A program made the position numbers and the translations under genes. 64,000 bases of DNA from Octopus sinensis (taxonomy: Eukaryota): contig NC_043005.1 in assembly GCF_006345805.1 (NCBI RefSeq), forward strand, positions 21,266,001-21,330,000. The letters run 5' to 3'. A model generated the notes under the pieces. The model made no database searches and had not been told where the DNA came from. It saw only the letters and a list, made by a program, of their open reading frames with translations. Positions 1,914 through 43,900 of the stretch are shown one piece after another (within the stretch, counting starts at the first letter, position 1; each line of letters starts with the position of its first letter).

Positions 1914-2084
1914 CTTACACAAAAGTTGACTGTGGACCTCCAAAAGACATTGCTGTTGCAACAAAATCCTACAAAACTACTTCCTACAAATCTGAAGTGA
2001 TCTATTCTTGTCCAGGAGGACTTGAATTTAAAGCAGTATGTAATGAATACCGTAAATGGGCTCCAGCAGTGACTGCTTGTAAAG
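1914..2084 (+). CDS. Exon S1, Sushi/CCP domain
   Basis: ttccattccag|CT...AAAG|gtaatc, 171 nt. [56 protein letters not shown] has the four-Cys plus Trp CCP pattern (CxxP, YxC, C, W, C). Confidence 0.9.
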
Positions 2085-5000
2085 GTAATCTAATAGGTTC
2101 TTGCTTTTTGTTTTTTCTCTGTCAAGTTAATTTTGTTTTATTTATGTGTTAAATGTCTTTGTCAGAGGAAGTCTGGCTGAGTTCATAAAAACTTCAATTG
2201 TATTTGTGGTTTGTGGAAGGGAGAGAAAATGCTATCCTCCGACTAGAGACTTTCCCTAATACTTGCAACAGAGTGGACTTCATTAAATCTATCCAAGGGC
2301 CAGGTAATTATATTGATTCGGTTGAAGCACAGGAAGCATGGAAGAACAGGAGCATGTTTTTTTTCCAGTAGGCTTCCACATAGTTCCCATTCACCAAATA
2401 AATTTTATCCACAAGATGTAATTTACAGTTGTAAGGCAAATTTTTAACCTCACAGCCAAAAGACCACCCAATACTCCATTATTAAGTAAACTTATTAACT
2501 CCACAATTATACCTTGGCTCATCTTTATAGTTTTCCTCTTAATTTCTAACTTGACCATTCTCATACATACTTTATGTCATCATCCAAAATTCTGTGCAAT
2601 TCAATGCATTGAGTCCTTCTTTATTAGAATTCAACAATAACATTGTGTAACAAATTTTCAATTAATTTTTTGTCTTTGGTTTGTAAGCACTATTTCTTAT
2701 TTGCTTCTATCTATAAATCAAAAGAAATGACAACTATTCCCTTCAAGCTTTGCTTTTGTGACTGGGATATCAATGTTTTGACACAACTATTTTCCATTAC
2801 ATTTCATACAGATTCACCACTGAGTTGCTGAAGCAGAAATATTGTTTTAGCAAAATATTCTGCTCCATACCACAGATTTGCTCAACATTTGCTTGACCTT
2901 AATCACTTGAGCATGTCCCTCAGTGGCTGACAATATGTGCATCTCTGATTATGAGCAAAAGTAGTGGGTGAGCATCATAGCCATGTGCTGAAAGGGATTC
3001 TTTAGGGTTTAAATAAACGTAACAAAAGTGAAGTTTGAAGGAGATATTAGCTATTTTTCATACTTTCTAGGGGTAAGCAAACAGGAAGTAACAGTTACTA
3101 CCCAAGGACAAAATTTCTGTTACACAGTGTAATGTGAAACACACTTCTGATGCTCTAAGTATCTTCCATTTCACTCTTCTAAATTATAATAATAAAAATA
3201 ATAGTGGTTGTTTCTAATTTGGGGGAAATAAATCAGTTTATGAAAGTAGGGATCTAGTCAATATCATCAATTTCATTACTTGACTGTCAGTTTGTTATTG
3301 AACCCCATAATATTAATAGGCAAAGTTTCCATTAGGTGGAGTTGTGTAGCATTTCTTCGCAAGCAGTAACTAGTATACATTTATACATTTAAAGCAATGA
3401 TGAGAATGATGATGCAATCCTTTTGAATGTCTCAGAATCTCTATCTAGAGCCATTTCAAGAACTCCACCATCACTCTGTATTCCAAAGACATGTATGCTC
3501 TCCAATTATTGTTATCTGATGTATAGGTTTATGCACTATGGGCCTCAAACACTTTCACTATTTTTGCCACTCTCATATCACTTTTAATAATTTTGAGGAG
3601 AGTATCATCCTCTTCATCCTCACCTTCTTTATAAGAAAAACTTTAAAAATGCAGTTGAAGGATTGACCAAGATGGAAGGTTCCCATTGTCAGACCTTTCA
3701 ACCTCATCCACAGCACAGCCTCTTTTGCTATAGCTACTGGACAGAGGAAAACTGCCTTCTCTGATCAATAAAAGGAGGGTATGGAGCAATCCTGTCCCTC
3801 ACACAATAGCAGCAGCTTGACATATCATTACAAGTCAATAATGCCTAGACACTGAACAAGTACATGTAAAATTGCTTTGTTGCTTAGTGCACTTCTTGGA
3901 TATCACCGTCTGATGGCAGTTTTATGACTGGATTTTTTTCTTGGTTTCAGAGAGCCATTTGATAGCACTGCCAAGAGCTCCAGGAAGTCACTCTTAGTAT
4001 TCCTTAACCAAAGACCTTTTTGAAACAAACTTGCCACCTCATTCACATCAAAACCCAGGGTATCCCTGAGATTTTTAGTGCTCTTACCTCTCCACTAATT
4101 TTCTATAGACTGCTAGAATGTAACAACCACCAATTCCATTGCCCAAGTCAGATTTGATTCACTATAATTTGAATTACATTAGATAATCTGGCCTTCCCTT
4201 TTTATGATAGTGATGTGTGATTGAGAGAAATTTTGCTAATATATCTCATATGTTGGGCTTCCACAGTGATAGTCCACAGTAAATGTTGAACTTAAAATTG
4301 CAAACTAACAGATCTAATGCAGCTTATCCTCTGGTATAATTTGTTGTCTTGTTCAACACCACCACCACCTTGCTCTTCAAGTGATGGTGTTGATGGTGGT
4401 GGACAATACTTGGTCCAATGTTAATATATCTATTATAAAATTAAACACTTGCATTGACCCACAGTTGCTCATGCTCAGCATAGACCACATATATTGCACA
4501 AGTGTAAATAGGAGGATAGCCTAAGAATTTCATAACATAACTGCTTCTGAATGGCCAAATTATTAATAAATAAAAATAGCCCCACATTTTAATAAGTTAT
4601 ATATTCATTATTTAGGCACAAGAGCAAGCATAATTAACCCAGCTGAAACTGCTTCAGGCTCTATAGTACAAATGTCTTATTTTCATAAGTTCTGAATTAA
4701 AATCTTCCATCAATACCTTAGTCACAATTTATGTTCATAACACTAACTTAATGATAACTAAGTTATTCTACTAAATTCTTTGTTATATGTAAAATTACTT
4801 AATAGAAACACAGAGCATCTCAACAGAAATATAGTAACAAAAGGGTTAAAGAAGCAATGACATTTTGCAATGTTCATGTCTTTCTCAAGGGCAGTACCTG
4901 TTTATATAAAGTGAACTAAGACTGAGAATCAAACCCAAATCATTGAATCACACCACTTTGTCCACATTTGTACTAATAGAAAAACTGGAAAAGAACAGCC

Positions 5001-8000
5001 AGGGTCACTTCCTGCATGGAAAACAAATAGGAAAATGACTTCTTTTTTAACCAAGTTGTTAGCACTAATTAAAATTACACCCTCAATGGCTGGTGAAATC
5101 ATTATGTTAATGATATGTTCTAGTTGTTTAATTCAGAAGACACATCCCTATGAAGATAAAAGAGATGGATTTTAGTTCTTGCCATGAGTAGCCATATTTT
5201 TTCACATGCTTTTACATTCAGGATTCAAATCCTATCTGGGTGTACTTTATCCTTCATACTTCTGTGATTGATTAAACAACCACTATTCAGGTACTGAGGC
5301 CAATTTATTTTCACGTAACCCTGCTGCAGAATATGTAGCCTTGTGTTTACATTAGAAGCTATTATCATAAATATTGGTAACATCAACAATAATTATGATT
5401 ATTTTTGTTGTTAATGGTGATGGCTTGGGTGAATCAACAGAGAATCAGACAAAATTTGTTGTGGTATTTGTTCTAGCTCTTTAACTTCTTTGTTAAAATT
5501 TGGCTTTTGTGAACTTTGGCTTTCCAGGGACAGTAAAATAAAACACCATCAAGTGTAGAGGCCAATTTAATTGGCCACTTCTGATCTCAAAGATTTGACC
5601 TACAGTCTATGTCAGAAATTATTATTTTTAATGTTGTTATTTTTCATTGGTCTAAATTTTACTTTAATTCCAGTTGCTGAGACCCATTTTGTGAAAGTAA
5701 AACATGCAGCTCTAGATGTACCCAAGAAAACATTATGGAATAAGAAAAATGTAACAGCAGACGGTTGTGCAGAAAATTGTGTGTCTGACGAAACTTGTTT
5801 ATCATTTGAATTAATTAAAAAAAGTGGGAAATGTTTCTTATCAAAGGAAAGTGCAGCTGCCTCTAGGAAAATTAAAGTAGACAATAGCAGAGATTATTAT
5901 CAACTAATAAATCGTAATTATTCTTTGTGCTTTATTCTTGAAATTCTCTTTTCCGTTTTTTTTTTTTTTTCCTGAAATTTGTGATTTCATTTGTACTTCA
6001 TAGTATACAGATAACCATTTCTGTAAAGACATTGACAGGTTAACTTTAAGGAGAGACAAACACCTGCTCCTGAGAAAAAACTAATATTAAGTTTGTAAAT
6101 TCTGTTAGGACATTCTCATACCACATTTGTGCACTTGGAAAAATTTTTGTATTTTTATATATGGAAACTGGCTTTTCTTAAACCTGTAGTAGTAGTAGTA
6201 GTAGTAGTAACTTATATATAGCACGTTAGCATGGCTTTTTCACAGTATCTTGCCCTTTGTTGCTCTCTTCCATAATCTGGGACACAAAATAACAGAAAAA
6301 AGTAATGCTAATCTATTTAGTTGTGTATCTCTTAAATTTTGACATCGTTATTATGGCTGGATGCCCTTCTTATTCACCTATCATTGTACCATTATACCAC
6401 ATGAAGAGTATATTCTTCCATAACACTAGAATTAGAGATAATTCTCTGCTGGGATGAAAAGAAAACAGCTAGCATATTTTGATCTCAAGCTCATTTAGAG
6501 CTCAGGTTTAAACAGATATAATTGCCAAACAGTTTCAAGTATTATGAATAGACATGTCATCAACAGATTTAAGGTTAAATTATCGAGATTCTACAAGAAG
6601 TTTGATATTTATATAAGGATTATTACCAATATAACTACATTCAACTAACTGAACATTGCTTTAAGCTTTAAGTCAGGTATCACACAAAGTATACTCTCAC
6701 AAAATGCCTAATAAAGAGAACAGACACTTTCACAGGAATTTCAAAACCTATTCTCATACTATAATATGAAACTTAATAGTTGGCATTACTCAAAGAATCT
6801 CCAGTTAATGTCAAAATAAGATATTTTAAACTATCTCCCTACCCCTAAAAATAACTGTTCTTCTACCAAAATTTGAAGCAATTATCATTACTGAAGTTGT
6901 GAACATCTTTTTGAAATTCCATAAGTTTGTGTATTGTCTTTCTTTCCATTGAGTTGTATTTGTTAATTTTATTGCTTTATTTGGATGTAAGGGAAATGTT
7001 GATTCCCTTTTGTTAATTGTCCCACAAGGGTAATTTTGAAAAAGGTATATTTGAAGATGAAACAGTTGTTCACTCTCAACACCTACCACAGCATCAGAGC
7101 AGTTGTAATGACCAGTAACAGTAGCATCGGTAACAATAACAATAAGAACAGTAACAACAACAACAGTACCAACAACCATCAACAATGTGATACATCATAG
7201 AGAGTGGGATATGCAAGCTTATGTGGGTTGGGCCCTGATTAATTAATACCAGTTCAAAGTTTCTGATAGTGTTGAAAATAGTACTTGGCTGCTGTTGTCA
7301 CAACAACTGGCTTTAATCTTTTTATTTCTGTAGTTGCATCACCAACAGCAATAGTTATGGTAAATGGCCACCTGTTGGAACCACTCAGCATCATAAAGTC
7401 AGTCTGCCAAAGTTGTCCTTTCACAGCTCTTTTGTATGATCCAGAGGAGAGTGGACAGCAGACTGCTGTCAGAGGTCTCACAGGGTCTCTTTCCACACAT
7501 TATAAGCTTTGATACTTGGTTGTTAATTGTCACGGGAGACATTCAACATCCAAGTACCAAACTCAAAATCCTAGCTGTCCCCAGCAAATCAGTTTTTTGG
7601 GGCTTGCTCTGCTCTTATGTCAATTCCAGTTTCTCTGACATATTTCTTGAACTTGGTTGTTAGTGCTCTGAGTGCCTCTACAACTGTTGGAATGACAGAC
7701 AATCTCCTCATAGTCCACATTCTTGCAATTTCGTCTTTTAGTAGTCTGTACTTTTCAGGCCTTTCTAGTTATTTGTCACTTATTCAAGCATCTCCAGGTA
7801 TTGCAATATCTATGATCTTGGTCTCCTTTTTTTCCTTTACCTACTGCTACAATATATGGTCTGAGCCTTGTTTAGGGAGTCACATTGGATTGTAAAATCC
7901 CACAGTATCTTATGTTCGTTATTCTCAGTGACTCCTTCTGGTTCATGTTTATACCATTTCTGTGCTTTATTCAGACCATACTTTTCACATAGCCTCCAGT

Positions 8001-10787: not shown

Positions 10788-10838
<51 letters not shown>

Positions 10839-11095: not shown

Positions 11096-11162
<67 letters not shown>

Positions 11163-11166
11163 TATT

Positions 11167-11208
<42 letters not shown>

Positions 11209-11415: not shown

Positions 11416-11471
<56 letters not shown>

Positions 11472-12334
11472 GTTTTAAGGTTAGTTAATTATGTAGATGT
11501 ACCATGTAACCCAAATATGAAATAAAATATTAGAAACCCATCTGGTTCAATATCTTTTCTACATACAATTTCTTATGTAAGCACAATTCATTCACAAAGC
11601 CATTTTTCAGCATAGTCGTTTTCAAAATTCATGTGAATTCTACTTCATCATGAAACATACTCGGAAGCTTGCCTCATTCTTTAGGTTTTCGATAAATTCT
11701 ATGTACATCCATCTTCTACTGATGTACTTTTCTTTAAAATTAAATGACCTTAAGAACACTTAACACATTGGTCAGCCATCTGTTGAACAGCACTTAGACC
11801 ATTAGAAGAGGTATGTACTCATGGATTATGTGCATCTTAAATGTTGAAACAAAGTTTCAAATGAGTCTGAAGATGTTCTACGCACACTGGAATTCTAAGT
11901 TGTCATTTTGTGGATCAATTATATGTTTATAATATATTGTCTTTTTAAAACAAATTATGCACCAGATGCTATATAATATTTAATGTGTGTTGAGTATAAA
12001 ATTTATTTCTTATTTTCTTTCTTTGTTTTTCTAGCCAAAGCTGATCTTTTTACATTTAAAAACATTATCATAATTGAGCCAGATACTTTGGAAACACAGA
12101 AAAATGTGAGCTTGCAGGAGTGTTATAAAACTTGCATTCAAAATCCATTGTGTAACTCTTTTAAGTATAATAAAGAGACAAAGATCTGTTATCATAGTAC
12201 TGACAATCACTTGACTCATGACCTTAAACCAAGCAAAGATAATTGGGATACTTACATCATTAACCCAGGTCAGTAGTGTTTTCATTTTAATTATTATGTA
12301 TGTGTATGCATCTACATGTGTGTATAATATATTT

Positions 12335-12383
<49 letters not shown>

Positions 12384-12389
12384 CACATA

Positions 12390-12428
<39 letters not shown>

Positions 12429-15400: not shown

Positions 15401-18400
15401 AACTTCTTGTTTACAGGGGATTTTTTTACCACCAGTTCTCAAGAGTGGCCATGGGAACAAGAATGGGTCTCAAATATGCAAACCTGTTCCTCAGCTATAT
15501 GGAGGCCCAAATACTCTCACGATTCACAGGTCTTACTCCTGAGCAATATGGTCATTATATTGAAGACTGTATTGATGTGACCTCACTCTCCCATGAACAT
15601 CTTGACACCTTCCTCTCCTTTGTCAAGACCGTCTAGCCTGCTCTCAAATTCTTTTGTACTGTCTCCAATTCCTCCATCGACTTTTTCAACATTTCTGTTC
15701 ATATTCACCACTCCTCTCTTGCCACCTCTATCCACAACAAACACACAGACTCACACTCCAATCTCAACTTCTCCTCCTCCCACCCTAACCACACCAAACT
15801 GTCTATCTCCTACTCTCAGTTCATCCATCTCCACCAGCTCTGCAGTAATGACAGTCTAAACTTATGGCTCGCCATTTCACCCTACATGAATACCTCCTTA
15901 CCATTATCCAAACTGCCATTGCTCTCTCTCAACTTCCACCCCATTCTTACATGCCTTCCTTTCCCCTTCATCTACCATCCTTCCATCTCCCACAACTCCC
16001 TCCCCCCCTTCTCTCCTTCAAACGTGCCCATAACCTATATGACTTTCTGGTCTGTAGTTTCTAGTCCACTGCAACATTTGTTGGCTTTTTAATTGTCCTT
16101 GTACAGAGGCCACCCACACTCCCACCTCTACTGAGGAATTGATTTTCTTTCTTCATTTCTTTGCTCCTTATATATATGTGTGTGTGTGTGCCTGTGAATA
16201 TGTATATGTATATATCATCATCATCATCATCATCATCATTGTTTAACGTCCGCTTTCCATGCTAGCATGGGTTGGACGGTTCAACTGGGGTCTGGGGAGC
16301 CTGAAGGCTGCACCAGGCCAGTCAGATCTGGCAGTGTTTCTACAGCTGGATGCCCTTCCTAATGCCAACCACTCCGAGAGTGTAGTGGGTGATTTTATGT
16401 GCCACCGACACAGGTGCCAGACGAGGCTGGCAAACGGCCACGCTCGGATGGTGTTTTTTATGTGCCACCGACACAGGTGCCAGACGAGGCTGGCGGACGG
16501 CCACGCTCAGATGGTGTTTTTTATGTGCCACCGACATACACATACAAATACATTTATTTATGCATCTATACAGACATACATATGTATATGCATCAATGTA
16601 TGTATGTATTTATATCTGTGCAAATTTTTTTCAATTTGAGTCACCCAATATATTGTATTGTAACATAGTCATTTTCTCCATGTTCTCATCTTTTTCCTAA
16701 CATGCACTCTTGACACCAGTTTCTATTATTACTTCCAGTTCATGAAAAAATTAACTGTGGAGTTCCAAAAGATATTCCTGGTATATTGAAGTTCTACAAA
16801 ACCACCAGGTATAAATCTGAAGTAATCTATACCTGTTCAAAAGGAGAACAATTAAAGTCAACATGTGAAATGAACAAAGAATGGACTCCTATAGTATCAA
16901 ACTGTAAAGGTAATGTAAATAGCTTCTTTCTTGTCTCTAGGTAATTTTTTTTCTTTTCGTGTTAAACACTTTTGTCAAAAGAAGTCTGACTGACTCCATG
17001 ACACTTTAGATGATATTTGGTGTTTGTGGCTGGTGGAGGGTGAGAGCTAGTTATATTCTGACCAGAGACTTTTCCAAATGCTTGCAACAGAGGGAGCATC
17101 CTTGATTCTACACAAGAAGCAGGTAATGATATGAATTTGGGTGATAGATTATGTCTGCCGACCAAGAGCTGGAAGAGTAGAAACTTCTTGTCTTCACCAG
17201 GCTTCCACATAGTTTCCATCTACCAAATTTTATCCACAAGGCTTAGTTGTGAAGCAAATTTTTAACTACACAGACAAAATTCAACCCACTTCCATATTAT
17301 TGTTATGTAAAATTATATCCACAGGTATACCTCAGTTCATCCTGGCTATTTTTCTCTTATGCACTGAGTCCTAGATTTCAGTAATCATCTAAAACAGACA
17401 TCTGATGCTCTTTTTCTCTTCCAATTTGCCATCCTTAATGTTTCCTGATTTATGCATGATGTCCACAATTTTTTGTGGGAGGCGTTTAGTCAGTATCATC
17501 AACCTACAATTTAACTGATACTTTATGTTTTCTGTCCCTGCATAAAGGAAAGCAACTGTAAGCATTTCATCCATATACATTGAAATTAAAGATAAAGGTA
17601 ATCATACAATCCTCTTGAATGTGAAAGGATCTTTCTCTAAGACCAATTGAAGAACCCCTTACTACTGAAGATCATCCTGATCTCAAAGGATAACTATCCT
17701 CTCTGATTATTGCTCTCTGACCTACAGATTTATGCACTGTGGTCTTCATCATCTCTCACTATTTTTACCATTTTCACTTCATTTTCAATAATTTTTCTTG
17801 AGGACAGCACCTTCCTCTCTATCATCAACCTCTTTATAACTGAAATTTGAAATACGTGGATGAGGTATTTACCAAAATGGAAAGGCAGTGCCATCTGATT
17901 TTTCATCCTCATCCACCATATAACATCTTTTGCTGTAGATATTAGAGAGAGAAAAACTGCCTTCTTTCCTTGGTTAAAGGTAGATGTGGGGCAATCACCA
18001 TGATGGACTTGGCTAATAGTCAAATCCATCATGCCATACAACAGCAGTTGTCTGACTTAAATCCATAAATCAGCAATGTGTGAACTATGAATGAATGAAT
18101 GCATGCAAAATGATTTTGTTTTGTGAAGGTACCTCATAGAGGCTTAGCTGATGATACTTTCATGACTATGGATTCTATCTTGCACCAGTGGATTCCTTTG
18201 ATTGCTCTTCCTAGCCAAGCACTTTAGAAAGTTGTCAATAGTATTGTGAACAAAAATCTTCCAAAACAATCTTGTCAGTTCATTTTCCATTAATGCCCAC
18301 AACAGTTTTAGAGATGTCAGTGAACTATCCCTCCACTTACCCTCAAGAGATTGTTAGAGTGAAACATCCAATATCCCCTTGCTCAAGTCAGGTTTAATCC

Positions 18401-21400: not shown

Positions 21401-21555
21401 AGACAAACACATGCTCCTGAAGAAAAAAAGTATTAAGAATTGTAAATATTGTTAGGGCATCCTCATACCGAATTTATTCACCTTGAATAAATTTATGCAT
21501 GCTTTCAATCATATTTTCTGTGTAAGAAAGGAAACATTATTTTCTGAAACCTGAA

Positions 21556-21591
<36 letters not shown>

Positions 21592-27500: not shown

Positions 27501-29786
27501 ACAGAAAAGAAGGGCCTATGGAATGGTGGACATTTGATTCTGCACAGAGGAAGAAGCCAAACATCACTCTCTGAATCCCCTCCAAAGCAAAGCACTGTTG
27601 TTAGTTCCTTTCTACTGCAGTCAGAGACTGGCTAAAATCATCATTCAACAAGAGTCGCCAGAAATAGCCATTCTTTGGCAAATTGCTGCAGTGACAATAG
27701 ACATTGAGGAAAACTCAAAAATCCTTGAAGCTTATCAGACCAAAAAAGAGAATCTGGTATAGGATGACCATAGAACTTATACAAATGACACAAAAGAATG
27801 TGGATCTCATGCCAGACCAGATCCTTCTTCCTGGGGGCAGCATAAATCCAATCAGGGTAGATGGAAGGAAAGCAATGTGCCACATTTGCTTTTCAACTAA
27901 CCAGTTAAAAGTCTTCTGCCCTAGACTAAAGGAAAAAGAGAGACAGGCACCTCTCCTCCCTACACAAACAATGGCTACCAGAACTCCAGCAACAGCAGCA
28001 CCATCATCATCAGCAGATTCAGCTGTGGCAACATCAACAACAATACCGATGCCAAGTTTCCCCAAACACTTTTCAACACCCGAAGATATTCCACTTCCTG
28101 ATGTGGAGCAGGTGGACATCACAGGTGGAGTCAGACCATGATGAGGAGTGGAAGTTGAAAACTGAAAAAAGAAAAAGAGACAGAAAAAAAACCAAACATA
28201 TAGACAAATAACAACAATCCTCATCCACACAAAAAGCAGAAAAAAATATCAAAACAAAAACAAATACACCCAAAACAGTCACTGTATCAACAACCACAAC
28301 CACCATCACAGCAACAACAAACACAAATTAAAGAGACTAACATTACAAACTGCATGGCAATAAGCACAAAAAACAATGGATTAATGAAGTACATAATGAC
28401 ACACAAAAACATTACACCAGACGATTTTGTCACAACCACAATCTTCCTACCTGCACACATACAAATCATTCAAACAACATAAAACACATACACATTCTTA
28501 AAAACGCAATTCACACAGGAAATTGGAGACTTGATCGCACTGCTTGTTAAAATCCCTGAGTATTTTGTAATGTTCATTTCCCATTACTCACTCTGGCTTG
28601 TGTTCATAACTTTGTTCAGCTCTCTCAAGGTTTGCTTTATTGCACAGCAGCCAGTGGACATATCTGGCCACATTGTCATGTCTCCTTTTATATTCACATT
28701 GTGCAAGCTTACAGCACTCACTAACAATGTGGCTTATACTTTCTCCTTTCTCAGGGTACATCCTACACTGTAGTGAGTCAATGCTTTTATTAATGTTATA
28801 TTTGGAGTAGTTTGTTCTGAGATCTTGTTTCTGAGTGCTGCACACTAATGCCTCATTGGGCCCTTTTAAGCCTCCTTTCTGCAGCCATTGCCATGTTCTA
28901 TTCCTTTTATTCTTCAAAAGCTGATTATGCATTATTGTTATTATTATTATTTCTTTATAGATAAATATGTAAAAGTACCAGCAATTGATATCTGGTGCAT
29001 TGTTTTATAATTGTTTTATACAAACATAACCCAGCCACAAAATTATTTTTCAGCATAACAGACACTTCTCAGAATTGATTTGAATTGCTGTACATCATGA
29101 CACATACACAAAAGCTCACCTGAATGTTTCAGCTGTAGATAATTCATTTATATATACCTCTATTGGTAGTGTTTGTTTAACATTGAATGGCCATAATAAT
29201 GCTTGATATTTTGGTTGACCACCTGTTTAAGGTCATACTAACCATATAAATGCACACCATGAGAGAGGAGATGTATAGATGTATTGTCTTCAGCCAAAAT
29301 ATTGGGACAAGTTTTCAATTAATTCTGATGATGTTATATAACTCACATGAATCATGACTAGGGTATCATTTGTACATCAATTATCTGTTTTGTCCATTTT
29401 CAAAATTATGCACTAGATGCCTTACAATAATTATCGTATGGAGCATCTGGGTATATTTGTGTTTGGGTGGATGGATGAGTTAAAAATAAACTGGTTATTT
29501 TTTTTTTTGCAGCTAATGATAAGCCTATCGTGTTGAAAAAAGTTAGCATGGCAAAGCAGGATATTTTGAAACGGTTTAAGAATGTGAACTTAAAGAAGTG
29601 TAATGAAGCTTGCTATCAATATCTAGAATGTAATTCTTATCAATACAATGAGGAGGAGAAGTTATGTGAGCTGAGTAATGTGACTCAGTTGACTGATAAA
29701 CTTAAACCCAATGGAAGTTGGGATGTATACATTATTAATCCAGGTCAGTAGAGTGTTTCCATCTAATTTATTGCTTGCATTGCTAT

Positions 29787-29821
<35 letters not shown>

Positions 29822-30870: not shown

Positions 30871-30919
<49 letters not shown>

Positions 30920-33900
30920 ATTTACTTAATTTATTTTGACTTATTTTTTTAAAATTATGTATTTCTACATTTTTATCCCTTTTATTGTTATTCACTTTAG
31001 TTTATGCTTGTATTCTTCTTTCAGTATAGTCTTGTCCTTTCTCCCTTTTCCTTGACATTTTCTCTTTCTAGTTTTGTCTTCCATTTGTTCGCTATCTACT
31101 TTTCTCGTAACACACATAGAAAAAGTCTCCTCATCCTCACAACCTCAGACGTCTGATCTCCATAACATAATGCAATAAAGGTTTTTACTTATAATCCATT
31201 ATAGTTAAGCATCAAATTGCAACCACAACAGTGAAACATATGAGAACAGATGATACAAATTTGTGCACTTCATAATTCCTTCAACATTTGTTGTGTGTAT
31301 CACAAACAGTAACACCACAAGTTAAAGCAGTAACTAATCAATTATAATCTAAGTAGATGGGATGTTCATCATTTATGTGATGCTTTAAATTCAAGAGTAG
31401 CAGTCATTCATCTAACTATACACACAAGATAGTATGTGTGTGTGCACATGCACGCAGGTGTGAAAATGTCTTCAGTTTGTTCACTCAATATCTTTTATGC
31501 TAAATTTATCACTATCTCCTCATTCTCCCTCTCTTTCTAACATATTCTCAAAATTGATATCAATTTCTCTTATCACTTCTAGTTTACACAGAAACTGACT
31601 GTGGACAGCCAAAAGACATTGCTAGAGCATCAAAATCTTACAACACCACTACCTTTCATTCTGAAGTGACTTATTCTTGTCCAGGAGGACATAAATTAAA
31701 AGCTATATGTAAAGAAGGCAATAGATGGCTTCCAGTAATGACTTCTTGTAAAGGTAAAAGGTTCTCACTTTTTCCTCTGTCTAGATAATTTTGTTTTATT
31801 TTTGTGTTAAGTTTCTTTATCAGTGAAAGACTGGCTATACCCATGTCAGTTTTCATGGTCTTTGTGGTTGGTTGGAGGGAGAGAAGAATTTACATAACCT
31901 CAGACCAGAAAACTTTGCAAATGCTTGCAACAGAGTAGATTTCATTAAATCTATTCAAAGGCAAGGTAATGATATCAAATTTAGTTGATGCATTAAGTTT
32001 TCCACTAAAAACAGGAAGCAATTAGAGCATGTTCTTTCCAGACGGTTTCCATCCATTAAATTTCATCCACAAGTACAAGTTGTCCTTATATTTTCGAACA
32101 AGGGAATCGATTCCCTTGTTTGAAAATATAAGGACACAGATCATGTCATATAGCCAAATGGAGACGATGTCTCCTGGAGCTAAATTACAGCAACACTTAT
32201 CCTAAATCAGGACTGCCATATTATATTGGCAAACAATCTTTACACCAAAGTACTGTCATTGAATATCTCTCGCTGTGAGATTTACTGTGGTTACTGTGCA
32301 AGTTGTGAAATTTGTGTTTTTGTGATCACATGTTTGAAAGGCCTGCGATTTTGTCATGGACAGGAACAAAGAGCCAACGTGAAATTTTGCGTTAAACTTG
32401 GAATGTATGTTATAGAGACATTGAGCATGCTTTGGAAGGCCTACAGCGATGAGGCAATAGGTCATACTCAATGTTTTGAGGGGCATGTGTGCTTCAAAAA
32501 TGGAAGAATGTTCCTAGAAGACAATGAATGATCCTAGATGATCTGTCACGAGTGTCACCCTCGGAAATGTGGTATTGTGCATCAAGAATTCATCCCCCAA
32601 GGGCAGATTGTCAATTGAGGGTCCTACCACGATGTTTTGAAATGTTTGAGGGAGGACATTCAGCAAAAGCAACCGGATTTGTATAGTATGAAGAATTGGA
32701 TTCTTCACCAAACTCTTCTCAATCATGAGTTTCTTGCCAAAAATAACATGGTACTGCTTCCACACCCACCCTATTCTCCAAATTTAGCACTTGCAGACTT
32801 CCACCTCTTCCTCAAGATGAAAATGAAGCTCAAAAGTCACTATTTTAACACTGTTGTCAAGATCAAGAGTGAATCACAGAAGATCTTCTACCTGCTTACA
32901 GAAAATGACTTCCAGGTGAGATTCCAAGAGTGAGAGGAATGCTGGGACTGAGGTATTACTGCACAAGGTGACTATTTATAAGTAGATGATGTTAAAACTT
33001 AGGTAAATTATTTATTTTTTATTAAACATAACTAATCTGGGAACCTTTTGATACCACCTCATATTCCATTATTTGACTGTTAGTTTGAGTTATTGACCCC
33101 CCACAAGATTAACAGGAAAAGTTTTCATTAGTTAGACTTGTGAAGCATTTCTTCCAAAGCTGTAACTAGTATACATTTATTAATTTAAAGCAAAGATGAG
33201 AATGATCAGGCAATTTTTTGACTGTTGAGGGATCTCTATTTAGGACATTTGAAGAACTCCATCATTGCTCTGTATTCCAAGGACAAGAGTCCTATCAAAT
33301 TATTGTTCTTTGATGTACAGGTTTATGCACCCTGGGACCCAACAACTTTCACTATTTTTGCCCCCCTCACACCATTTAGAACATTTTCCTTGTGGAGAGT
33401 ATCTTCCTCTCCATCCTCATCTTTATAAATGAAACTTTAAAAATGTCTTGTGCTATTTGCTCTGGCTCTTTAATATCTGATTTCAAATCTTGCTAATATT
33501 AACATTGCTCTTCCTGAGCCAACAAAGTGGAAAACCAATCAAGTGTAGAGACCAATTTAATTGACCAATTCAGACCTCAAATTTTTGTTCTTTTGTCTCT
33601 GTTAGAAATTATTTCTTTTATTGTTGCCGTTGTTTTCATTGGTGTAAATTTTATTTTAATTCCAGTTGCTGAGAACCATTTTGTGAAAATAGTAAGTGCA
33701 GCTCTAGATATATCTGGGAAAATATTGTGGAAAAAGGAAAGAGTAACAGCAGAAGCCTGTGCAGAAAAATGTGTGTCTGATGAAACTTGTATATCATTTG
33801 AAATAATGAAAAAAACTGAGCAATGTTACTTATCAAAGGAAAGTGCAGCTACCTCTAAGGAAATAAAAGCAGACAATAGCAGAAACTACTATCAACAAGT

Positions 33901-36900
33901 AAAACGTAATTATTTTTTGTTCTTTATTATTGGAATTTTCTTTTCTTTTTTTTTTCTTGGAATTTGTTATTCCATTTGTAATCCATAGTATGTAGACAAC
34001 CATTTCTGTAAAGACATTGACAGGTTTACCTATAATGAAAGGCATAGAGACATTCTAAAAAAAAAACAGTATTAAGAATTATAAATACTGAGCAGCAACA
34101 GGAGTAACAGTAGTAGCATCAGTAGTGGTGGTGGTAGAAGAAGAAGATGAAGAAATGATGCCAAATTTTGACACATACATAGCAGTTCTAAGGGGAGTGG
34201 TAATTCATACCACTTACCACAATTCATGATTAGTATTATATAGTATCTGCACCAGAAGGATGAAAGACAGTTTTTTTTCCTGACGGAGTTTGAACTTGGA
34301 GTGTAATAAGACAGAAGACATAAGCAAGGTAGCATGTCTTTTGCACAGTATTTCACCTTTGTTGCATTCCTCTATAATCTGACATGTAAAATAACAGAAT
34401 AAAGTAATGCTAATTTATTTAGTCATGTATCTCCTATATTTTGGTATGGTTATTATGGATGGATGCCTTTCCTGTAACCAGCCATTATACCCACATAAAA
34501 AGAGTTCCTTTTTCCATGCTACTAGAATTCGAGAAAATAGGAATATTTCCATAGTATCAAATAGAAAACAGCCAGCAAATTCACTGGAATTGATCACAAG
34601 GGTTTTGTCTTTGCTACCAAGACCCTTTCTTCTTGATATGCTGTGCTCAGGGCAAACATTAGATTTAGTGACTTCAATGGTTGAATACTCATGAATGCCT
34701 GCATGCCATTTCTATCATGATGAATCTTTCTTGTCAAAAATAAATGAGAGTCATTTCTTTGTATATCTATGAGACAACTCTAATGGGCCAAAATTGCCAA
34801 CCTCACTACAATTTGTATTCAGTGTACAATCAAGAATTTCAGACACATTCATGGCTCAGGTTTATACAAAGATAATTGCCTATTTCAAGTAATATGAACA
34901 ACCCCTTATCCAAAATTTCAGGCCTAGTGGCTATTGTAGAAACTATCACCACCACCACCATCATCATCATAATTATTATTATTCAACATTGGATAGTTTC
35001 AGGCAAATTTCCACTGCATTATTTGCTACACCTCAGTGTTGCTGAGGTGTGTGCTGCATTGTGTAGTCTTGTTTTCTTTCTGCTGTTGGAGAAGAACAAA
35101 CTCTTCCAAGTATTGTATTGCATCTATTTGTTTTGTCATGTGGTTTGGCTTTAGTCTTTTGTTGTATTAGTGTTTGTATTGTGTGTTGTGTGTATAATGT
35201 GAGTTGTGTCCTTCTCTTGGGTATCCGACTTATAGAGTACATGTTGCAGTGGTTGTTTATTTTATTGGATATTTACTGTGTAGAATGAATCTTGTGTTTC
35301 TGGATTGTTTATTCAGGTCATACTATTGAATTGATAATGTTTTACATAAGATGTGGGCTTCTCCCAGCAGAGATATTTTTTGGAGTGTGTAATGTTGAGG
35401 GTCTGGTATAGCTTCTATATTTTTGTTCATACACATTTTCGTCATATCCTACGCACCACTTATTACTGGTATTGTTTTCACCTTTATGCCCCACATCTTG
35501 AGTGTTTCAAGATCTTTGTACTTTGACAATATCTCCACTTCTTTTTGGTCAGAAGGGACTGCAGTGTTTATCAGTAAGCTGGTGTTTGTTTTCTTTTCCA
35601 ATCATTAATTATTATATCTGGCTGGTTATCTTTGATTTCTTTGTCATGTACATTGTTTGACACATGTTTATACCATTTTTCGTGTAGCGTTGGCATATTG
35701 ACCAGTGGATATAATTACTTACTCTGTCATGCCTGTATATCTGTTCAAATTTGGCAAGGACTGGACAGCTAGAGATGATGTGGTCAATTGTCTCATTGTT
35801 CAGGTTGCACTGTCCGTATTTGATGTTCAGGCCTGTTTTCACTATTTTGTTTTTATAGTTTTTTTGTGGTCAGAGATTGGTTTTGTACAGCAACAATCAG
35901 TCCTTCCATTTCTGTTTTTAATCCAAAGTCTTGTTTGTTGGCTTTTACCTAGGCTCACTTCTCTGTCAAACCTTGCAAGGTATTGGCCATAGAGTGATTT
36001 TTCCCTCCATTTCTTCTTTACTGTGTTTTGTAGTTTTGTTTTTATGCTGTTTTTTGTCTCTTTGACCATTTCTGTTGTGTTGTCTTCTGAGATCAGAGTA
36101 TCAGTGTAGTTTGTTTCTGTTTCATATTTTGTCACTTCCTTGTGTATAAAGAAGTGTTTCTTTCTTTTTTTTTTGTATGTGTTGCTTTATTACATAGAAG
36201 TAGTCTTCCACTTTCTGTTTCTAAGTATTTTTCTAGTCCAACTGTTGTTATTTTATAGTAGTTCTCCTTCTGTGTCAGGCCATGACCTTCTTTCTGAGCA
36301 GGGTAGATATATTCTGTCTCGGTTTTGGGGCAGTAAATTTGGTATTATGTTAATAGGTTCCTGTTCTTCTTTGCATCTAAGTTTCTCATTTCATTAATCT
36401 TCCAGTTTATTATGTTGAAGCTATAATCTATGACAAGAATAGGTAGTGTGTTTATCCCTGTTATCTTATTTTTTAGCAAAGTTCAGTATTTGATATTAGT
36501 CTAACTCTTCAGTAATTTTCTCTCCTAATTTTCTCTTTCAATTTTGTGTGTTGTATTTTCGCTATTTTGTCTATTTCTAGATATTTGTATGGGCAATTGT
36601 GATCTAATTCTCTGATTTTTGTGTCTATTTTGAGTGCAGTGTTTTCAGTGTTGATTAATTTGCCTCTTCTTTATGTCACTTTAACATGTCCAATTCCATG
36701 TTCACCCTTATGTTCTTGCTGAAACTGTGGACAATTTTTAGAAGATTTTTCTGTTCCATGGTATTCTTAGTGAAACCTTTTAAGCCATCAATATATAGGA
36801 GATGATTTATTATTTGTCCATAGCATCTATAACCCTTGGTGGTTTCATTTAACAAGTTTCTTAGTAGGTTTCGAGCAAGGCAGAAAAACAACAGGGACAA

Positions 36901-38017: not shown

Positions 38018-38073
<56 letters not shown>

Positions 38074-41000
38074 TCCATTTATTATTAAAAGGTATTATTA
38101 AATGTTGTTTAGTTTCAACTTTTGTCTTGTATTTGAGATAATCATAAATATGTGAGGGTTTAAGGGAATGGCAGGAGCAAGAGAAACAGCTTAGTGAATT
38201 CTGCAGGTCAGTAAATAGATTTGGCAGATGGTGAAGAGATCAGCAATAGGCATTCCTGTGCCATAAGGAATCAAAGAGGCCTTACACCCTTGGGGTCAGC
38301 AGAGGTCAAATGTGTTTACTACTACTAGCAATAAATGAGAGCACTGATCTTGGCCTTGGAAAGAACCAATTCTCCTTGTTCTATTTACTGATGGAAAAAA
38401 TAATTATAATTATATATATATATATACTAAATTTCTGAATTATTTTCATTCAAAATTTATCTTTTCTGTTTGGCTGTGGTTTACAGTTTTTGTAATTGTG
38501 CAGTTTGTATATATTGGCAGGTGCTTACCTCTTTAATTTTTTTTTTCATCATGCATTTAATTGTGTTGTTGCAATAAAAGGCATGTTTACATATTTGGGT
38601 AGTCAAGGAGAAAAGAAAGATGAAATTTTCACACAAAATTGTAGATATTAAAACTTTTAGATTTTCTCGAGATGTTCGTTTGTATGTCTGATCAGGGAAG
38701 ACTGTAGTGTTTTTGCAATAAAAAGGTTGTTCCCATTTTTGAATACTCAAGGAGAAAGGAAAGAAAAGGAGGGTAAAATTTTCACAGAAAATTGTAGATA
38801 ATAAAGCTTAAAGATTGTTGTTATTGTTGTTGTTGTTGTCGTTGTTGCTGTTGTTGTTGTTGCTGCTGCTGCTGCACCTGCTGTTGTTGTTGTTTTGGTT
38901 TCGTCCAGGTTTAGTCATATTCCTGATACAAATTATGTGGATAGCTAGTTACTACTACCTGTAAATTAAGTGTCCACAAGTTTTCAGCAGTCTTTGAAGT
39001 GCTTAGAACTTTACTGATAATCTTTGCTGTCCTTAACAGACAAATTTTCTGTAGGAGCTCTATCAGGCATTCTATTTCAATCTCATTCAGCCATTTATAT
39101 CTTTACTTACTGTTCCCAATGCACCAATTATTAGGGACACAACCTTTATTGTTCGCATGCCCCAATTTCTTTCTATTTCAAGTTTTAAGGGATTGTACTT
39201 CTTTTGTTTTTCTTCCTCTTTCTGTATGATCCTGGAATCAAATGGGCATGATAGTTCGATAAGTAAGCAACTTCGTTTTTCCTTATTTATAATCGTTATG
39301 TCTGGTCTATTATTTTCTAATTTCTTGTCCATTTGAATAGGAAAAGCCCACAAAATCTTACATTTCTCTGACTCCAGTACTCTTTTAACTCGATGATTGT
39401 ACCATGTATTTCCAGTTTCAAATCCCTATTTCTGGTACAGTTTCCAGTGTATAATTTTTACAATTCGGTCGTGCCTCCATTTGTTATATTTTTCCTGTGC
39501 CAACTTGAGACATTCTACCACAATGTGTGCCACTGTCTCATTCCAAGTTCCACAGGCTCTACATTTTTCTGAAACATGCTCTCCATATATATTTTTTCTC
39601 AAGTTGGTTGTTTTTATTGTTTGATCTTAGGCTGTTACAATTAAGCTCTCTGTTTCTTTTTTATTGACCCTTTCTTAACCAAGCCCAGGATTTTGTTTCA
39701 CATACATCTTCAGTGGCTCTCCAGAATTGGCCATGCAGAGGTTTCTCTTTGATCTGTCTGATGTGCTCTCTTTGTATTTTATTCTTATCCTTTTCTTCTA
39801 TTACACACTTCATCACCTGTTCTTTATGAACTGTCTTTAGTAGTTTTTCTGTTTCAAATGAGTCTCAAGATTTTCTACACTCACATGAATTCTGACTAAG
39901 CTGCCATTTTGTGGATCAATTTTTTGTACTACATAGATACTATATAATATTTAATGTGTATTTTAGTATAAAATGTATTTCTTGTTTCCCTTCTTTCTTT
40001 CTAGCTGATGAGGACATTTTTACATTTAAAAATGCTATCTTAGATGTGCAGGATGTTTTTGAACCACTGAAAAATCTGAGCTTGAAGGAGTGTAAAGGAG
40101 CTTGCCTTCAGACTCCAGGATGTAGCTCTTATAAGTATAATGAAATGGCAAAGACCTGTCATGGAAATAATGCATCTCACTTGACTCATAACGTGAAACT
40201 AAACAAAAAGGGTTGGGATACTTACATCATTAACCCAGGTCAGTAGGGAGTTTTCATTTTATTTATTGTGCATGCATTTACATGTGTCTTTTTGTGTGTC
40301 TTTGCATTTACATACATGTGTGTGTGTGTGTCAATATATATATATATGTATATGATGGCCATCTACTCGTGACCAAGGACCTTTAGGAACATTGTACGCT
40401 CTAGGACTAACTTATATTTTGCATTTGTGGCTCCATTGGTGGCTAATGAGCCATGCTCTTGACAAGCATACATGACTGCAAACATTGCAAACCAAGCTTT
40501 CTCCATTCACTACACTAGCAGTGCACTTTCAAGCAGCACGCTTAAATTTTTCATGCAGAATACATGCTCTCTCAAAGGTATCAACTCCTTCCTTAACCTG
40601 CATCCTCCATCTGTGGTGATGACAGGCATTGCTCTCCCAGTCAGTCTCCTGTATATCACAGGCCTTTAATGAGGACTTAGCACAGTCCTTAAATTGCAGC
40701 CTTCATTTCTGGCAGGGTTTCTTTCCACTAACATGTTCCTCACATAACAAGTGTTTAGAGATCCTGCTCTCCTTCATTCTAATAATGTGTCTAGTCCAAC
40801 ATAACTGGTGCTTGTGCACCATTGTCTCAATACTCAAGATATAAGCTGTCCTCAGAACATGTGTGTCTGGAATTTTTAAGGTTCAGCCAACATTCAGAAA
40901 GTGTTTCAGATATCTCTGATGAAAGCATTCAAGGACCCTTACATGACATTTATAAGGAAGAAAAGAGCTCATCGGTTCTGTATCAACATGCCGAGCAGGA

Positions 41001-43816: not shown

Positions 43817-43900
<84 letters not shown>

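What the first reader, a model, noticed from the sequence alone, without database searches (positions are those of the whole stretch)
1914..40238. Strong excess of amino-acid-changing over silent differences between paralogous exons
Hand codon counts. S1 vs S3: 22 of 56 codons change the amino acid and only 3 differ silently (36/171 nt differ). A1 vs A3: 29 replacement vs 4 silent of 79 codons. B1 vs B2: 38 replacement vs 3 silent of 77. C1 vs C2 is less skewed (about 31 vs 13). Neutral expectation is roughly 3:1 by sites, and Cys/Trp and the frame are fully conserved, so this is not simple decay. Inference: diversifying selection on binding surfaces, as in immune receptors or gamete-recognition proteins.
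Basis: partly seen in the sequence, partly recalled or inferred. Interest (0 to 1): 0.82.

Follow-up and report, generated by a model that had tools for sequence, protein, structure and literature searches.

The report
Fast-evolving octopus Sushi–PAN repeat gene
The window is part of a very large octopus gene array built from duplicated three-exon modules (one Sushi and two PAN/apple domains); the copies keep their cysteine scaffold and reading frame, while other residues change at or above the neutral rate, with real but uneven signs of positive selection in the PAN exons.

Summary
The claimed "strong excess" does not hold as stated. For these AT-rich codons the neutral replacement:silent codon ratio is 4.4-5.5:1, not 3:1. 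None of the four ratios departs significantly from that.

The window is Octopus sinensis chromosome CM016867.1. The 13 "paralogous exons" are internal repeats. All are on the + strand, in phase 1-1, with AG/GT splice sites. They splice serially into (Sushi-PAN-PAN)x4+Sushi, as gene models of O. sinensis and O. vulgaris show.

They are not decaying. Units 1 and 3 show 0 indels in 645 exon nt against 12.8 expected, and all 52 Cys are kept.

Only B1-B2 is nominally above 1 (omega 3.4, p=0.012). Most other pairs lie between 0.4 and 0.9. Orthologues and O. bimaculoides duplicates give 0.1-0.55.

Site models give a firmer signal. Among seven local copies of PAN exon A, about 24% of sites have omega about 4.5 (LRT 24.5, p=5e-6). 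B/C is marginal and Sushi shows nothing.

Verdict: diversifying selection is partly supported for the PAN domains. This is a new member of a known kind.

The parts
1914..2084 (+). Exon S1, a Sushi/CCP domain: 171 nt, phase 1-1, 4 Cys plus Trp
   Evidence: AG/GT boundaries. Pfam Sushi PF00084. Identical in O. vulgaris and included in its gene model CAI9728792.
5674..5913 (+). Exon A1, the first PAN domain of unit 1: 240 nt, phase 1-1, 4 Cys
   Evidence: It differs from O. vulgaris by 3 replacements. The O. vulgaris model skips it. The O. sinensis model LOC118764741 uses it in part.
12035..12268 (+). Exon B1, the second PAN domain (B type) of unit 1: 234 nt, phase 1-1
   Evidence: Present in both species' gene models. 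Foreground of the significant branch-site test.
16739..16909 (+). Exon S2, Sushi domain of unit 2
   Evidence: It shows one AGG->TAC triple change against O. vulgaris.
21050..21286 (+). Exon A2, the first PAN domain of unit 2: 237 nt, with a one-codon deletion
   Evidence: It groups with A1/A3, although S2 and C1 do not group with unit 1/3 exons.
29513..29743 (+). Exon C1, the second PAN domain (C type) of unit 2: 231 nt
31583..31753 (+). Exon S3, Sushi domain of unit 3
33666..33905 (+). Exon A3, the first PAN domain of unit 3. The NCBI model uses an alternative acceptor 60 nt upstream (33605-33664).
   Evidence: The AlphaFold2 model of A3-B2-S4 has mean pLDDT 83.
40005..40238 (+). Exon B2, the second PAN domain (B type) of unit 3
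44390..44560 (+). Exon S4, Sushi domain of unit 4
50400..50639 (+). Exon A4, the first PAN domain of unit 4. The Trp is replaced by Val.
57049..57282 (+). Exon C2, the second PAN domain (C type) of unit 4. The Trp is replaced by Ala. It is not in any annotated protein found.
63260..63430 (+). Exon S5, the Sushi domain of the next unit. The array runs on past the window's end.
48666..48788 (+). Partial copy of the 3' half of exon A4, 99.2% identical to 50497-50619. It lacks the matching splice sites.
60761..60868 (+). Rearranged fragment of exon C2. 60791-60868 is 93.6% identical to 57121-57198.

Best explanation
The window is a stretch of a very large, octopod-specific tandem array on Octopus sinensis chromosome CM016867.1.

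**Structure (shown)**
- The repeating unit is a three-exon module: Sushi, then PAN (type A), then PAN (type B or C).
- B and C alternate, so the higher-order repeat has six exons.
- Every exon is symmetric in phase (1-1). The modules therefore splice head to tail into long proteins made only of PAN and Sushi domains. Whole modules or single exons can be duplicated or skipped without breaking the frame.
- The array grew by segmental duplication that carried the introns along, and intron homology is still visible.

**Selection**
- Shown: after duplication the 4-Cys scaffold, the reading frame and the splice sites stay under purifying selection. About one quarter to one third of sites have omega near 0-0.2.
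- Shown: the remaining residues change at about the intron rate.
- Inferred from codon models: a subset of residues changes faster than neutral. In PAN exon A these lie in the N-terminal strands and loops and in the C-terminal segment. The same holds in the young B1/B2 pair. This is positive diversifying selection among the repeats.
- The Sushi exons are merely weakly constrained.

**Function (inferred, weak)**
The product is an extracellular multi-lectin or adhesion-like protein whose serial PAN domains have been pushed to differ in surface chemistry. The basis is that only extracellular-type Sushi/PAN domains are found, and that a signal peptide can be read at the start of the Abdopus relative GON-Abd-1. 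That relative comes from a posterior-salivary (venom) gland transcript, which suggests a secreted salivary role. No expression data were available here.
For: **Identity and splicing**
- The sequence is 100% identical to O. sinensis GCA_006345805.1.
- P0001 (LOC118764741) joins B1-S2-A2-C1-S3-A3-B2-S4.
- O. vulgaris CAI9728792 joins C0-S1-B1-S2-A2.
- All 13 exons are phase 1-1 with AG/GT and give one open 914-aa frame.
- Pfam PAN_1 scores 216 bits and Sushi 43 bits.
- The AlphaFold2 model has pLDDT 83. Foldseek matches factor XI/prekallikrein apple domains, Toxoplasma MIC4, the Sarcocystis SML-2 lectin, the HGF N domain and leech LAPP.

**Duplication with introns:** collinear intron HSPs are 66-80% identical between units.

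**Purifying selection on the scaffold**
- Units 1 and 3 show 0 indels in 645 exon nt against 12.8 expected (P=2.7e-6).
- In neutral simulation, P(no stop)=0.004 and P(all Cys and Trp kept)=0.00025.
- M1a puts 20-34% of sites at omega 0-0.2.

**Near-neutral bulk**
- Exon p-distance is 0.211 and the adjacent intron 0.206.
- M0 omega is 0.8-1.3 in the window.

**Positive selection**
- A local array: M2a-M1a LRT 24.5 (p=5e-6) and M8-M8a 23.0. With F1x4 the LRT is 18.1. With a double-hit rate it is 14.8 (delta 0.08) and 8.9 (delta 0.2). PHI is not significant.
- The B1/B2 branch-site LRT is 7.98.
- B1-B2 omega is 3.4 (p=0.012), or 5.1 (p=0.008) with a double-hit parameter.
- U1-U3 at a-priori variable sites gives omega 2.4 (p=0.006; 0/250 in the bootstrap). 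There pN is 0.282, against pS 0.166 and intron 0.196.

**Family restricted to octopods:** only 8 proteins reach E<=1e-30 among 1.84 billion representatives.
Against: - Whole-exon omega is not significantly above 1 for S1-S3, A1-A3 or C1-C2. Pooled U1-U3 is borderline (p=0.05).
- With L002/L003 copies added, B/C and S show no positively selected class. Non-window A copies alone show none either. The signal is therefore local and rests on 7 sequences.
- The foreground branches and pairs were chosen after seeing the data.
- My codon-model code is home-made. It uses NJ topologies, and M7/M8 were fitted with fixed branch-length proportions.
- The intron yardstick comes from BLAST HSPs and may underestimate neutral divergence. 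If the true p is about 0.25, pN at variable sites is no longer significantly higher.
- The recent O. sinensis-O. vulgaris comparison gives 4 replacement and 3 silent events in 1695 nt. That is omega about 0.3-0.5 and uninformative.
- No transcript evidence was seen directly. The NCBI model contains odd pieces: a non-family exon at 7029-7115 and truncated A1 and A4.
- Surface location of the selected sites was not tested.
Confidence: 0.6

Rival explanations
1. Relaxed constraint only. After tandem duplication the redundant modules keep only the fold-determining residues, and every other site drifts neutrally (omega=1). On this view the values above 1 come from sampling noise, post-hoc choice of pairs, depressed synonymous rates and model misspecification. 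Synonymous rates could be depressed by splicing enhancers in short exons inside very long introns. From memory (Liscovitch-Brauer et al. 2017), they could also be depressed by RNA-editing structures in coleoids.
For: - M1a already fits S and extended B/C, with about two thirds of sites at omega=1.
- Exons and adjacent introns differ equally: 0.211 vs 0.206.
- pS (0.163) is somewhat below the intron value (0.196), though not significantly.
- Three of the four reader pairs are not significant.
- U1-U3 also changed at 12 nonsynonymous positions that are invariant in all other copies, with omega 0.59, not significantly different from 1.
Against: - For the A local array, M2a-M1a LRT is 24.5 and M8-M8a 23.0. 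The nulls in those tests already contain a neutral class.
- pN at a-priori variable sites exceeds the intron divergence (p=0.0003).
- A parametric bootstrap under omega=1 never reached the observed omega.
Confidence: 0.3
2. The exons are dead copies, that is, a pseudogenised array decaying neutrally.
For: - Overall exon divergence equals intron divergence.
- S1, C2 and S5 are in no annotated O. sinensis protein.
- Exon fragments lie at 48666-48788 and 60761-60868.
Against: - All 13 exons are open, with canonical splice sites.
- Length differences are only in multiples of 3.
- There are 0 indels against 12.8 expected (P=2.7e-6).
- All 52 of 52 Cys are kept, and the neutral simulation gives P=0.00025 for one unit pair alone.
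- Gene models in two species include the exons.
Confidence: 0.02
3. The modules are separate small paralogous genes, each with its own promoter and leader, rather than internal repeats of one transcript.
For: - In-frame hydrophobic stretches precede the A exons (for example 33527-33665), and these could mimic signal peptides.
- The Abdopus relative GON-Abd-1 has only one A-C-S set.
Against: - The hydrophobic stretches are translations of the polypyrimidine tract before the acceptor.
- Every exon begins and ends in phase 1, with AG and GT.
- Annotated models of 667, 857, 1730 and 2643 aa splice many modules in series.
Confidence: 0.05

Closest known systems
GON-Abd-1 (UniProt R4G2C1), a posterior-salivary (venom) gland transcript of Abdopus aculeatus. 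From memory, this is the family reported by Ruder et al. 2013, J Mol Evol 76:192. The paper's existence is confirmed through the reference list of PMC4619613.
   Same: It has the same three domain types in the same circular order (PAN-A, PAN-C, Sushi). It is 48% identical over half of the query. It is an octopod protein.
   Different: It has a single module, read as preceded by a signal peptide. Pfam records a C-terminal GON domain (PF08685). No GON domain was found in the window or in the long O. sinensis, O. bimaculoides or O. vulgaris proteins, and a search with the GON part returned nothing. The window carries at least 4 modules of an array with dozens.
Coagulation factor XI / plasma prekallikrein apple domains, the plasminogen and HGF N-terminal PAN domains, and leech antiplatelet protein
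   Same: They share the PAN fold. They are the top Foldseek matches (E 2e-6 to 2e-2), and Pfam PAN_1 is passed. In factor XI the domains are tandem.
   Different: Sequence identity is 9-27%. The octopus domains have the 4-Cys PAN core and lack the third disulfide that defines apple domains. They are not attached to a protease or kringle domain. The repeat number is far higher.
Apicomplexan micronemal PAN/apple lectins (Toxoplasma MIC4, Sarcocystis SML-2)
   Same: MIC4 is the best sequence-level match in the PDB (4a5v, E=1.3e-7), and both are Foldseek matches. They are arrays of PAN domains used for carbohydrate or host binding.
   Different: They are phylogenetically unrelated organisms and have no Sushi domains. 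Galactose binding was not tested for the octopus protein.
Tandem-domain proteins with diverging repeats under positive selection, such as abalone VERL (from memory: the first repeats are positively selected and the rest are homogenised)
   Same: These are internal repeats encoded by duplicated exons, with a conserved Cys scaffold and elevated dN/dS in some repeats.
   Different: The domain types differ (ZP-N vs PAN/Sushi). Here no concerted evolution is detectable within exons (PHI not significant). There is no evidence of a reproductive role.
SVEP1-like / CSMD-type Sushi-repeat proteins (NCBI's name for the neighbouring O. sinensis model P0003)
   Same: They contain Sushi/CCP repeats in a long extracellular mosaic protein.
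   Different: No VWA, EGF or pentraxin domains are present. The name is a by-similarity label only.

Membership tests
PAN/apple domain superfamily (Pfam PF00024 PAN_1) | Profile match above the curated cut-off | tested here: met
   PAN_1 scores 216 bits for the whole protein against a cut-off of 21.4, in 8 stretches that correspond to the 4 A and 4 B/C exons.
PAN/apple domain superfamily | The PAN fold: a beta-sheet cradling one alpha-helix, pinned by two core disulfides | tested here: met
   The AlphaFold2 model (pLDDT 83) shows strands plus one helix per PAN exon. Foldseek matches factor XI, prekallikrein, MIC4, SML-2 and the HGF N domain. Four Cys are invariant.
Apple-domain subtype (factor XI / prekallikrein) | Six Cys, including a third disulfide that links the N and C termini | tested here: not met
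   Each A, B and C exon has only 4 Cys.
Sushi / CCP / SCR domain (Pfam PF00084) | Profile match above the cut-off, four Cys and the conserved Trp | tested here: met
   Sushi scores 43 bits against a cut-off of 20.7. C6, C32, C42, W48 and C55 are invariant in all 14 S exons. There is a weak match to the CCPs of decay-accelerating factor.
Coleoid venom-gland 'GON-domain' proteins (GON-Abd-1 type) | A C-terminal GON domain (PF08685) after the PAN-PAN-Sushi set | tested here: not met
   No GON hit appears in the window's spliced product or in the long family members P0006-P0009. The search with the GON part found nothing. The ends of the array were not seen, so a distal GON exon is not excluded.
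Coleoid venom-gland 'GON-domain' proteins | Expression in the posterior salivary gland and a signal peptide | not testable with these tools
   No expression data were available. No 5' exon of the gene lies in the window.
Genes under diversifying (positive) selection | A site class with omega above 1 in nested codon models (M1a/M2a, M7/M8/M8a) | tested here: met
   The feature is met for exon A only.
- Local array A: LRTs 24.5, 22.9 and 23.0. Window-only A gives p=0.015-0.033 and extended A p=0.006-0.008.
- B/C is marginal: window p=0.02, local p=0.018-0.08, extended not significant.
- S is not significant in any set.
Genes under diversifying (positive) selection | Whole-sequence dN significantly greater than dS between copies | tested here: inconclusive
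   B1-B2 has omega 3.4 (p=0.012) and pooled U1-U3 has 1.72 (p=0.05). S1-S3 and A1-A3 are not significant. C1-C2 has 0.42, and most other pairs are below 1.
Genes under diversifying (positive) selection | Selected sites cluster on the exposed or binding surface | not testable with these tools
   Only secondary structure is returned. Replacements affect 49% of loop residues and 34% of strand/helix residues (p=0.038). The 12 selected A sites fall in columns 2-30 and 62-71, with none in 31-61.

The most novel reading that the evidence does not exclude
The array may be a diversity-generating locus. It has dozens of phase-1-1 Sushi/PAN exons, and the PAN domains are driven apart by positive selection. 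The exons could be combined through exon skipping or alternative module use into a repertoire of secreted recognition proteins, for immune-type pattern recognition or for prey-directed salivary binding. Two hints point this way. The O. vulgaris model skips A1, and A1 is the one exon that carries three replacements between the sister species. The NCBI model also uses an alternative acceptor at A3.
Probability: 0.1. Interest if true: 0.75.

Novelty: new member of a known kind. Interest (0 to 1): 0.45.

Why it matters
Cephalopod genomes are known for a few large lineage-specific gene expansions. This locus adds a large, apparently undescribed one.

- It is an octopod-restricted tandem array of Sushi-PAN-PAN modules.
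- Gene models reach 2643 aa and 153 kb in O. sinensis, and 3597 aa in O. vulgaris.
- Its first PAN domain shows a robust signature of positive selection among repeats.
- I found no paper that mentions these loci.
- Its only named relative is a venom-gland transcript.

If the selection signal holds, the locus is a candidate for a recognition or prey-binding system that evolves by module birth and divergence. It is also a clean natural example of how symmetric-phase exons let a protein grow and diversify.

The finding also carries a methodological lesson. Raw replacement:silent codon ratios overstate selection in AT-rich coding sequence.

Tried and rejected
1. Biopython's cal_dn_ds (YN00/ML) timed out. 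I replaced it with my own NG86 and GY94-type likelihood code.
2. Global MAFFT alignment of 250-nt flanks gave p of 0.27-0.55, because homology ends inside several flanks. I rejected it as a neutral yardstick and used the intron parts of BLAST HSPs instead.
3. Pseudogene decay is rejected on indels, stops and Cys retention.
4. Within-exon gene conversion as the source of the signal: the PHI test is not significant in all nine data sets. Between exons the history is mosaic, since A2 groups with A1/A3 while S2 and C1 do not.
5. Multi-nucleotide mutations as the source: the signals persist with a double-hit parameter.
6. A search for annotated proteins containing C0, S1, C2 and S5 found none in O. 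sinensis. The search with the GON part of GON-Abd-1 found nothing.
7. An exact-ORF look-up of the B1 ORF in read assemblies found nothing on record.
I redid it with substrings of database proteins.
9. Pfam on ten intronic ORFs gave nothing usable.
10. Literature searches for GON-domain, PAN or Sushi in octopus, and for the LOC identifiers, returned nothing relevant.
11. M7/M8 on non-window B/C and S copies crashed on an overflow after A had finished. I did not repeat it for those two.

Full report
**What is in the window**

The sequence is AT-rich eukaryotic DNA (GC 0.28-0.45). An all-against-all comparison of stop-to-stop ORFs shows three families of short open frames on the + strand, recurring four to five times in a fixed order. 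Alignments with flanks locate canonical splice sites.

| Exon family | Window coordinates | Length |
|---|---|---|
| S | 1914-2084, 16739-16909, 31583-31753, 44390-44560, 63260-63430 | 171 nt |
| A | 5674-5913, 21050-21286, 33666-33905, 50400-50639 | 237-240 nt |
| B | 12035-12268, 40005-40238 | 234 nt |
| C | 29513-29743, 57049-57282 | 231-234 nt |

- Every exon starts with two bases that complete a codon and ends with one base of the next codon (phase 1-1).
- Joined in genomic order, the exons give one open 914-aa frame: (Sushi-PAN-PAN)x4 + Sushi.
- Pfam confirms PAN_1 (216 bits, 8 stretches) and Sushi (43 bits).

**Whose gene it is**

- The window is identical to Octopus sinensis GCA_006345805.1, chromosome CM016867.1, around 21.27-21.33 Mb.
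- NCBI's model LOC118764741 (P0001) splices part of A1, then B1-S2-A2-C1-S3-A3-B2-S4, then part of A4.
- The O. vulgaris protein CAI9728792 (P0008) splices three upstream modules, then C0-S1-B1-S2-A2, skipping A1.
- So the "paralogous exons" are internal repeats of long transcripts, not separate genes.
- The array continues on both sides.
  - A C-type exon lies 2 kb upstream of the window (L001 2874-3098).
  - O. vulgaris locus L004 shows three more modules upstream. Its next gene model is 3597 aa.
  - The neighbouring O. sinensis gene LOC118764742 is 2643 aa with 21 PAN stretches, spread over 153 kb.
  - A further family member lies 450 kb upstream (L002).
- B and C types alternate along the array, so the higher-order unit has six exons.
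- An exhaustive HMMER search of 1.84 billion representatives finds only 8 proteins at E<=1e-30. All the named ones are from Octopus species. Argonauta gives only weak hits.
- The only relative with a descriptive name is GON-Abd-1. It is an Abdopus aculeatus transcript with one PAN-PAN-Sushi set plus a GON domain.
- An AlphaFold2 model of A3-B2-S4 (pLDDT 83) has two PAN folds and one Sushi fold. Its nearest solved structures are factor XI/prekallikrein apple domains, Toxoplasma MIC4, the Sarcocystis SML-2 lectin, the HGF and plasminogen N domains, and leech antiplatelet protein.

**Checking the observation**

|---|---|---|
| S1-S3 | 22:3 (36/171 nt differ) | same |
| A1-A3 | 29:4 | same |
| B1-B2 | 38:3 | same |
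| C1-C2 | 30-31:13 | about 31:13 |

The yardstick is wrong.
- N:S sites are about 4:1 here (509:127).
- Codons with both kinds of change are scored as replacements.
- A fitted neutral model therefore predicts 4.4-5.5 replacement codons per silent one.
- The observed ratios have P=0.40, 0.24 and 0.11.

Nei-Gojobori dN/dS is 1.40, 1.18, 1.71 and 0.37 for the four pairs, and 15 of the 18 other pairs are below 1.

**Is it decay?**

No.
- Introns of units 1 and 3 carry one indel per 50 nt.
- The 645 exon nt carry none, against 12.8 expected (P=2.7e-6).
- In neutral simulations of one unit pair, only 0.4% of runs stay free of stops and 0.025% keep all Cys and Trp.
- All 52 Cys are kept in the 13 exons.
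- Trp is lost in A4 and C2.

**Rates against neutral yardsticks**

- Within the same BLAST HSPs, exon and adjacent-intron p-distances are 0.211/0.220 (S), 0.167/0.212 (A) and 0.256/0.182 (B). Pooled, they are 0.211 and 0.206.
- The exons as a whole therefore change as fast as introns, although a quarter to a third of their sites are frozen.
- Pairwise ML (GY94, F3x4) gives the following:

| Comparison | omega | p (against omega=1) |
|---|---|---|
| S1-S3 | 1.22 | not significant |
| A1-A3 | 1.24 | not significant |
| B1-B2 | 3.44 | 0.012 |
| C1-C2 | 0.42 | 0.047 |
| Pooled unit 1 vs unit 3 | 1.72 | 0.05 |

- F1x4 and equal codon frequencies give the same or higher values.

**An a-priori partition**

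I split sites by whether the amino acid is invariant in the 24 copies outside the window (L002 and L003).
- At invariant sites, U1-U3 has omega 0.59.
- At variable sites (151 codons), omega is 2.40 (LRT 7.46, p=0.006). Orthologues at those same sites have 0.69.
- With a double-hit parameter the result holds: omega 2.76, p=0.0075.
- Under a parametric bootstrap at omega=1, none of 250 replicates reached 2.4.
- In counts, pN is 0.282 against pS 0.166 (Fisher p=0.0175) and against intron 0.196 (p=0.0003).
- Caveat: the intron value comes from alignable HSPs and may be low.

**Site and branch models (my own implementation, NJ trees)**

| Data set | Exon family | Result |
|---|---|---|
| Window only | A | M2a-M1a p=0.033; M8-M7 p=0.015 |
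| Window only | B/C | M2a-M1a p=0.021; M8-M7 p=0.024 |
| Window only | S | not significant |
| Extended, with O. sinensis L002 and O. bimaculoides L003 | A | M0 omega 0.75; significant (p=0.006-0.008) |
| Extended | B/C | M0 omega 0.67; not significant |
| Extended | S | M0 omega 0.59; not significant |
| Non-window copies alone | A | omega 0.50; no selected class |
| Local array, n=7 | A | M0 omega 1.07; M8-M7 22.9; M8-M8a 23.0; free-branch M2a-M1a 24.5 (p=5e-6) |
| Local array, n=7 | B/C | M8-M8a 4.43 (p=0.018); M2a-M1a 5.03 (p=0.08) |
| Local array, n=9 | S | omega 0.69; not significant |

- The branch-site test with the unit 1/3 clade as foreground gives B/C LRT 7.98 (about 31% of sites at omega 5.4), A 1.64 and S 2.23.
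- The local array consists of the window copies plus the upstream modules recovered from O. vulgaris, which is 98.9% identical to the window.
- In local A, about 24% of sites sit at omega about 4.5.
  - The LRT is 18.1 with F1x4.
  - It is 14.8 and 8.9 with double-hit rates of 0.08 and 0.2.
- PHI recombination tests are not significant in every set.
- The selected A columns (2, 3, 12, 16, 17, 21, 22, 30, 62, 68, 69, 71) avoid the central helix-hairpin core.
- Replacements between units 1 and 3 hit 49% of loop residues and 34% of strand/helix residues (p=0.038).

**Other comparisons**

- Orthologous exon pairs between O. sinensis and O. bimaculoides give pooled omega 0.54 at dS 0.21 (p=0.002 for being below 1).
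- O. bimaculoides internal duplicates give 0.12-0.39.
- U1-U3 dS (0.17) is slightly below the species dS. That duplication is therefore about as old as, or younger than, the sinensis-bimaculoides split. Its protein divergence (dN 0.29) is about 2.5 times that of orthologues (0.114).
- Between O. sinensis and O. vulgaris, non-exon DNA differs at 0.58% and the eight covered exons at 0.53%.
  - There are four replacement events: three in A1, and an AGG->TAC triple change in S2.
  - There are three silent events.
  - That is too few to discriminate.

**Conclusion**

- The biological inference is partly right.
  - The scaffold is conserved and most other sites drift at the neutral rate.
  - PAN exon A of the local array carries a robust positively selected class, and so, more weakly, does the B1/B2 lineage.
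  - The Sushi exons and the older or more distant copies do not.
- The most likely mechanism has three parts:
  - tandem birth of phase-1-1 modules inside a very large extracellular protein gene;
  - scaffold conservation;
  - diversifying selection on part of the PAN surface.
- The protein's function remains inferred only from domain types and from the venom-gland relative.
- I rate this a new member of a known kind, with moderate interest.

Noticed in passing
window 48666-48788: This is a 123-nt copy of the 3' half of exon A4, 99.2% identical to 50497-50619. It sits 1.7 kb upstream of A4 and has no matching donor site. It looks like a very recent partial exon duplication.
   Followed up: partly
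window 60761-60868: This is a rearranged fragment of exon C2. 60791-60868 is 93.6% identical to 57121-57198. The C2 donor region (57277-57307) is copied just before it.
   Followed up: partly
window 7592-9562 (-), 28591-29004 (-), 35452-35869 (-), 38914-39626 (-), 45185-47627 (+): An interspersed repeat family supplies 14 related ORF fragments in the introns, on both strands. The longest is 244 aa at 46563-47297. No Pfam domain matched. It is probably a retroelement remnant.
   Followed up: partly
window 16198-16697 (+), 19356-19562, 53865-54292 (-), 44095-44376, 63031-63201: A second short interspersed repeat family occurs here. It includes a 63-bp tandem duplication at 16393-16536 and sits just upstream of several S exons, at the unit boundaries.
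   Followed up: no
window 32226-32933 and 47868-48155: These ORFs contain '...PPYSP(N/D)LA...F(H/F)LF...' motifs that read like mariner/Tc1-type transposase remnants. Pfam gave no hit at E<=0.01, so this rests on reading only.
   Followed up: partly
window 11096-11208, 12323-12427, 43817-44017, 58693-58856: Long microsatellites are present: (TTA)38, (TA)53 directly downstream of exon B1, (CTAT)50 just before unit 4, and (TTC)55.
   Followed up: no
window 14001-16000: This is a C-rich block (GC 0.455, GC skew -0.56) in the B1-S2 intron, unlike the rest of the window.
   Followed up: no
window 5730, 5758, 5762 (exon A1) and 16807-16809 (exon S2): All four amino-acid replacement events between O. 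sinensis and O. vulgaris in eight exons fall in two spots. Three are within 33 nt of A1, which is the exon the O. vulgaris model skips. The fourth is a three-base AGG->TAC change in S2.
   Followed up: partly
window 7029-7115 and 33605-33664: The NCBI model LOC118764741 includes a non-family exon inside the A1-B1 intron. It also uses an acceptor 60 nt upstream of A3, which adds 20 hydrophobic residues translated from the polypyrimidine tract. The model looks noisy.
   Followed up: partly
window 21032-21578 vs 5656-6209 and 33648-34090: The segment around exon A2 is as close to units 1 and 3 (77-79%) as those two units are to each other. The S2 and C1 segments are much more distant (66-67%). 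The history is mosaic, from a separate duplication or a conversion tract that covers the A exon and its flanks.
   Followed up: partly
L003 (O. bimaculoides) vs window and L002: The same modules are packed about twice as densely in O. bimaculoides (19 exons in 45 kb) as in O. sinensis. One O. sinensis intron (L002 13864-35509) is 22 kb, against 2 kb for its orthologue.
   Followed up: no
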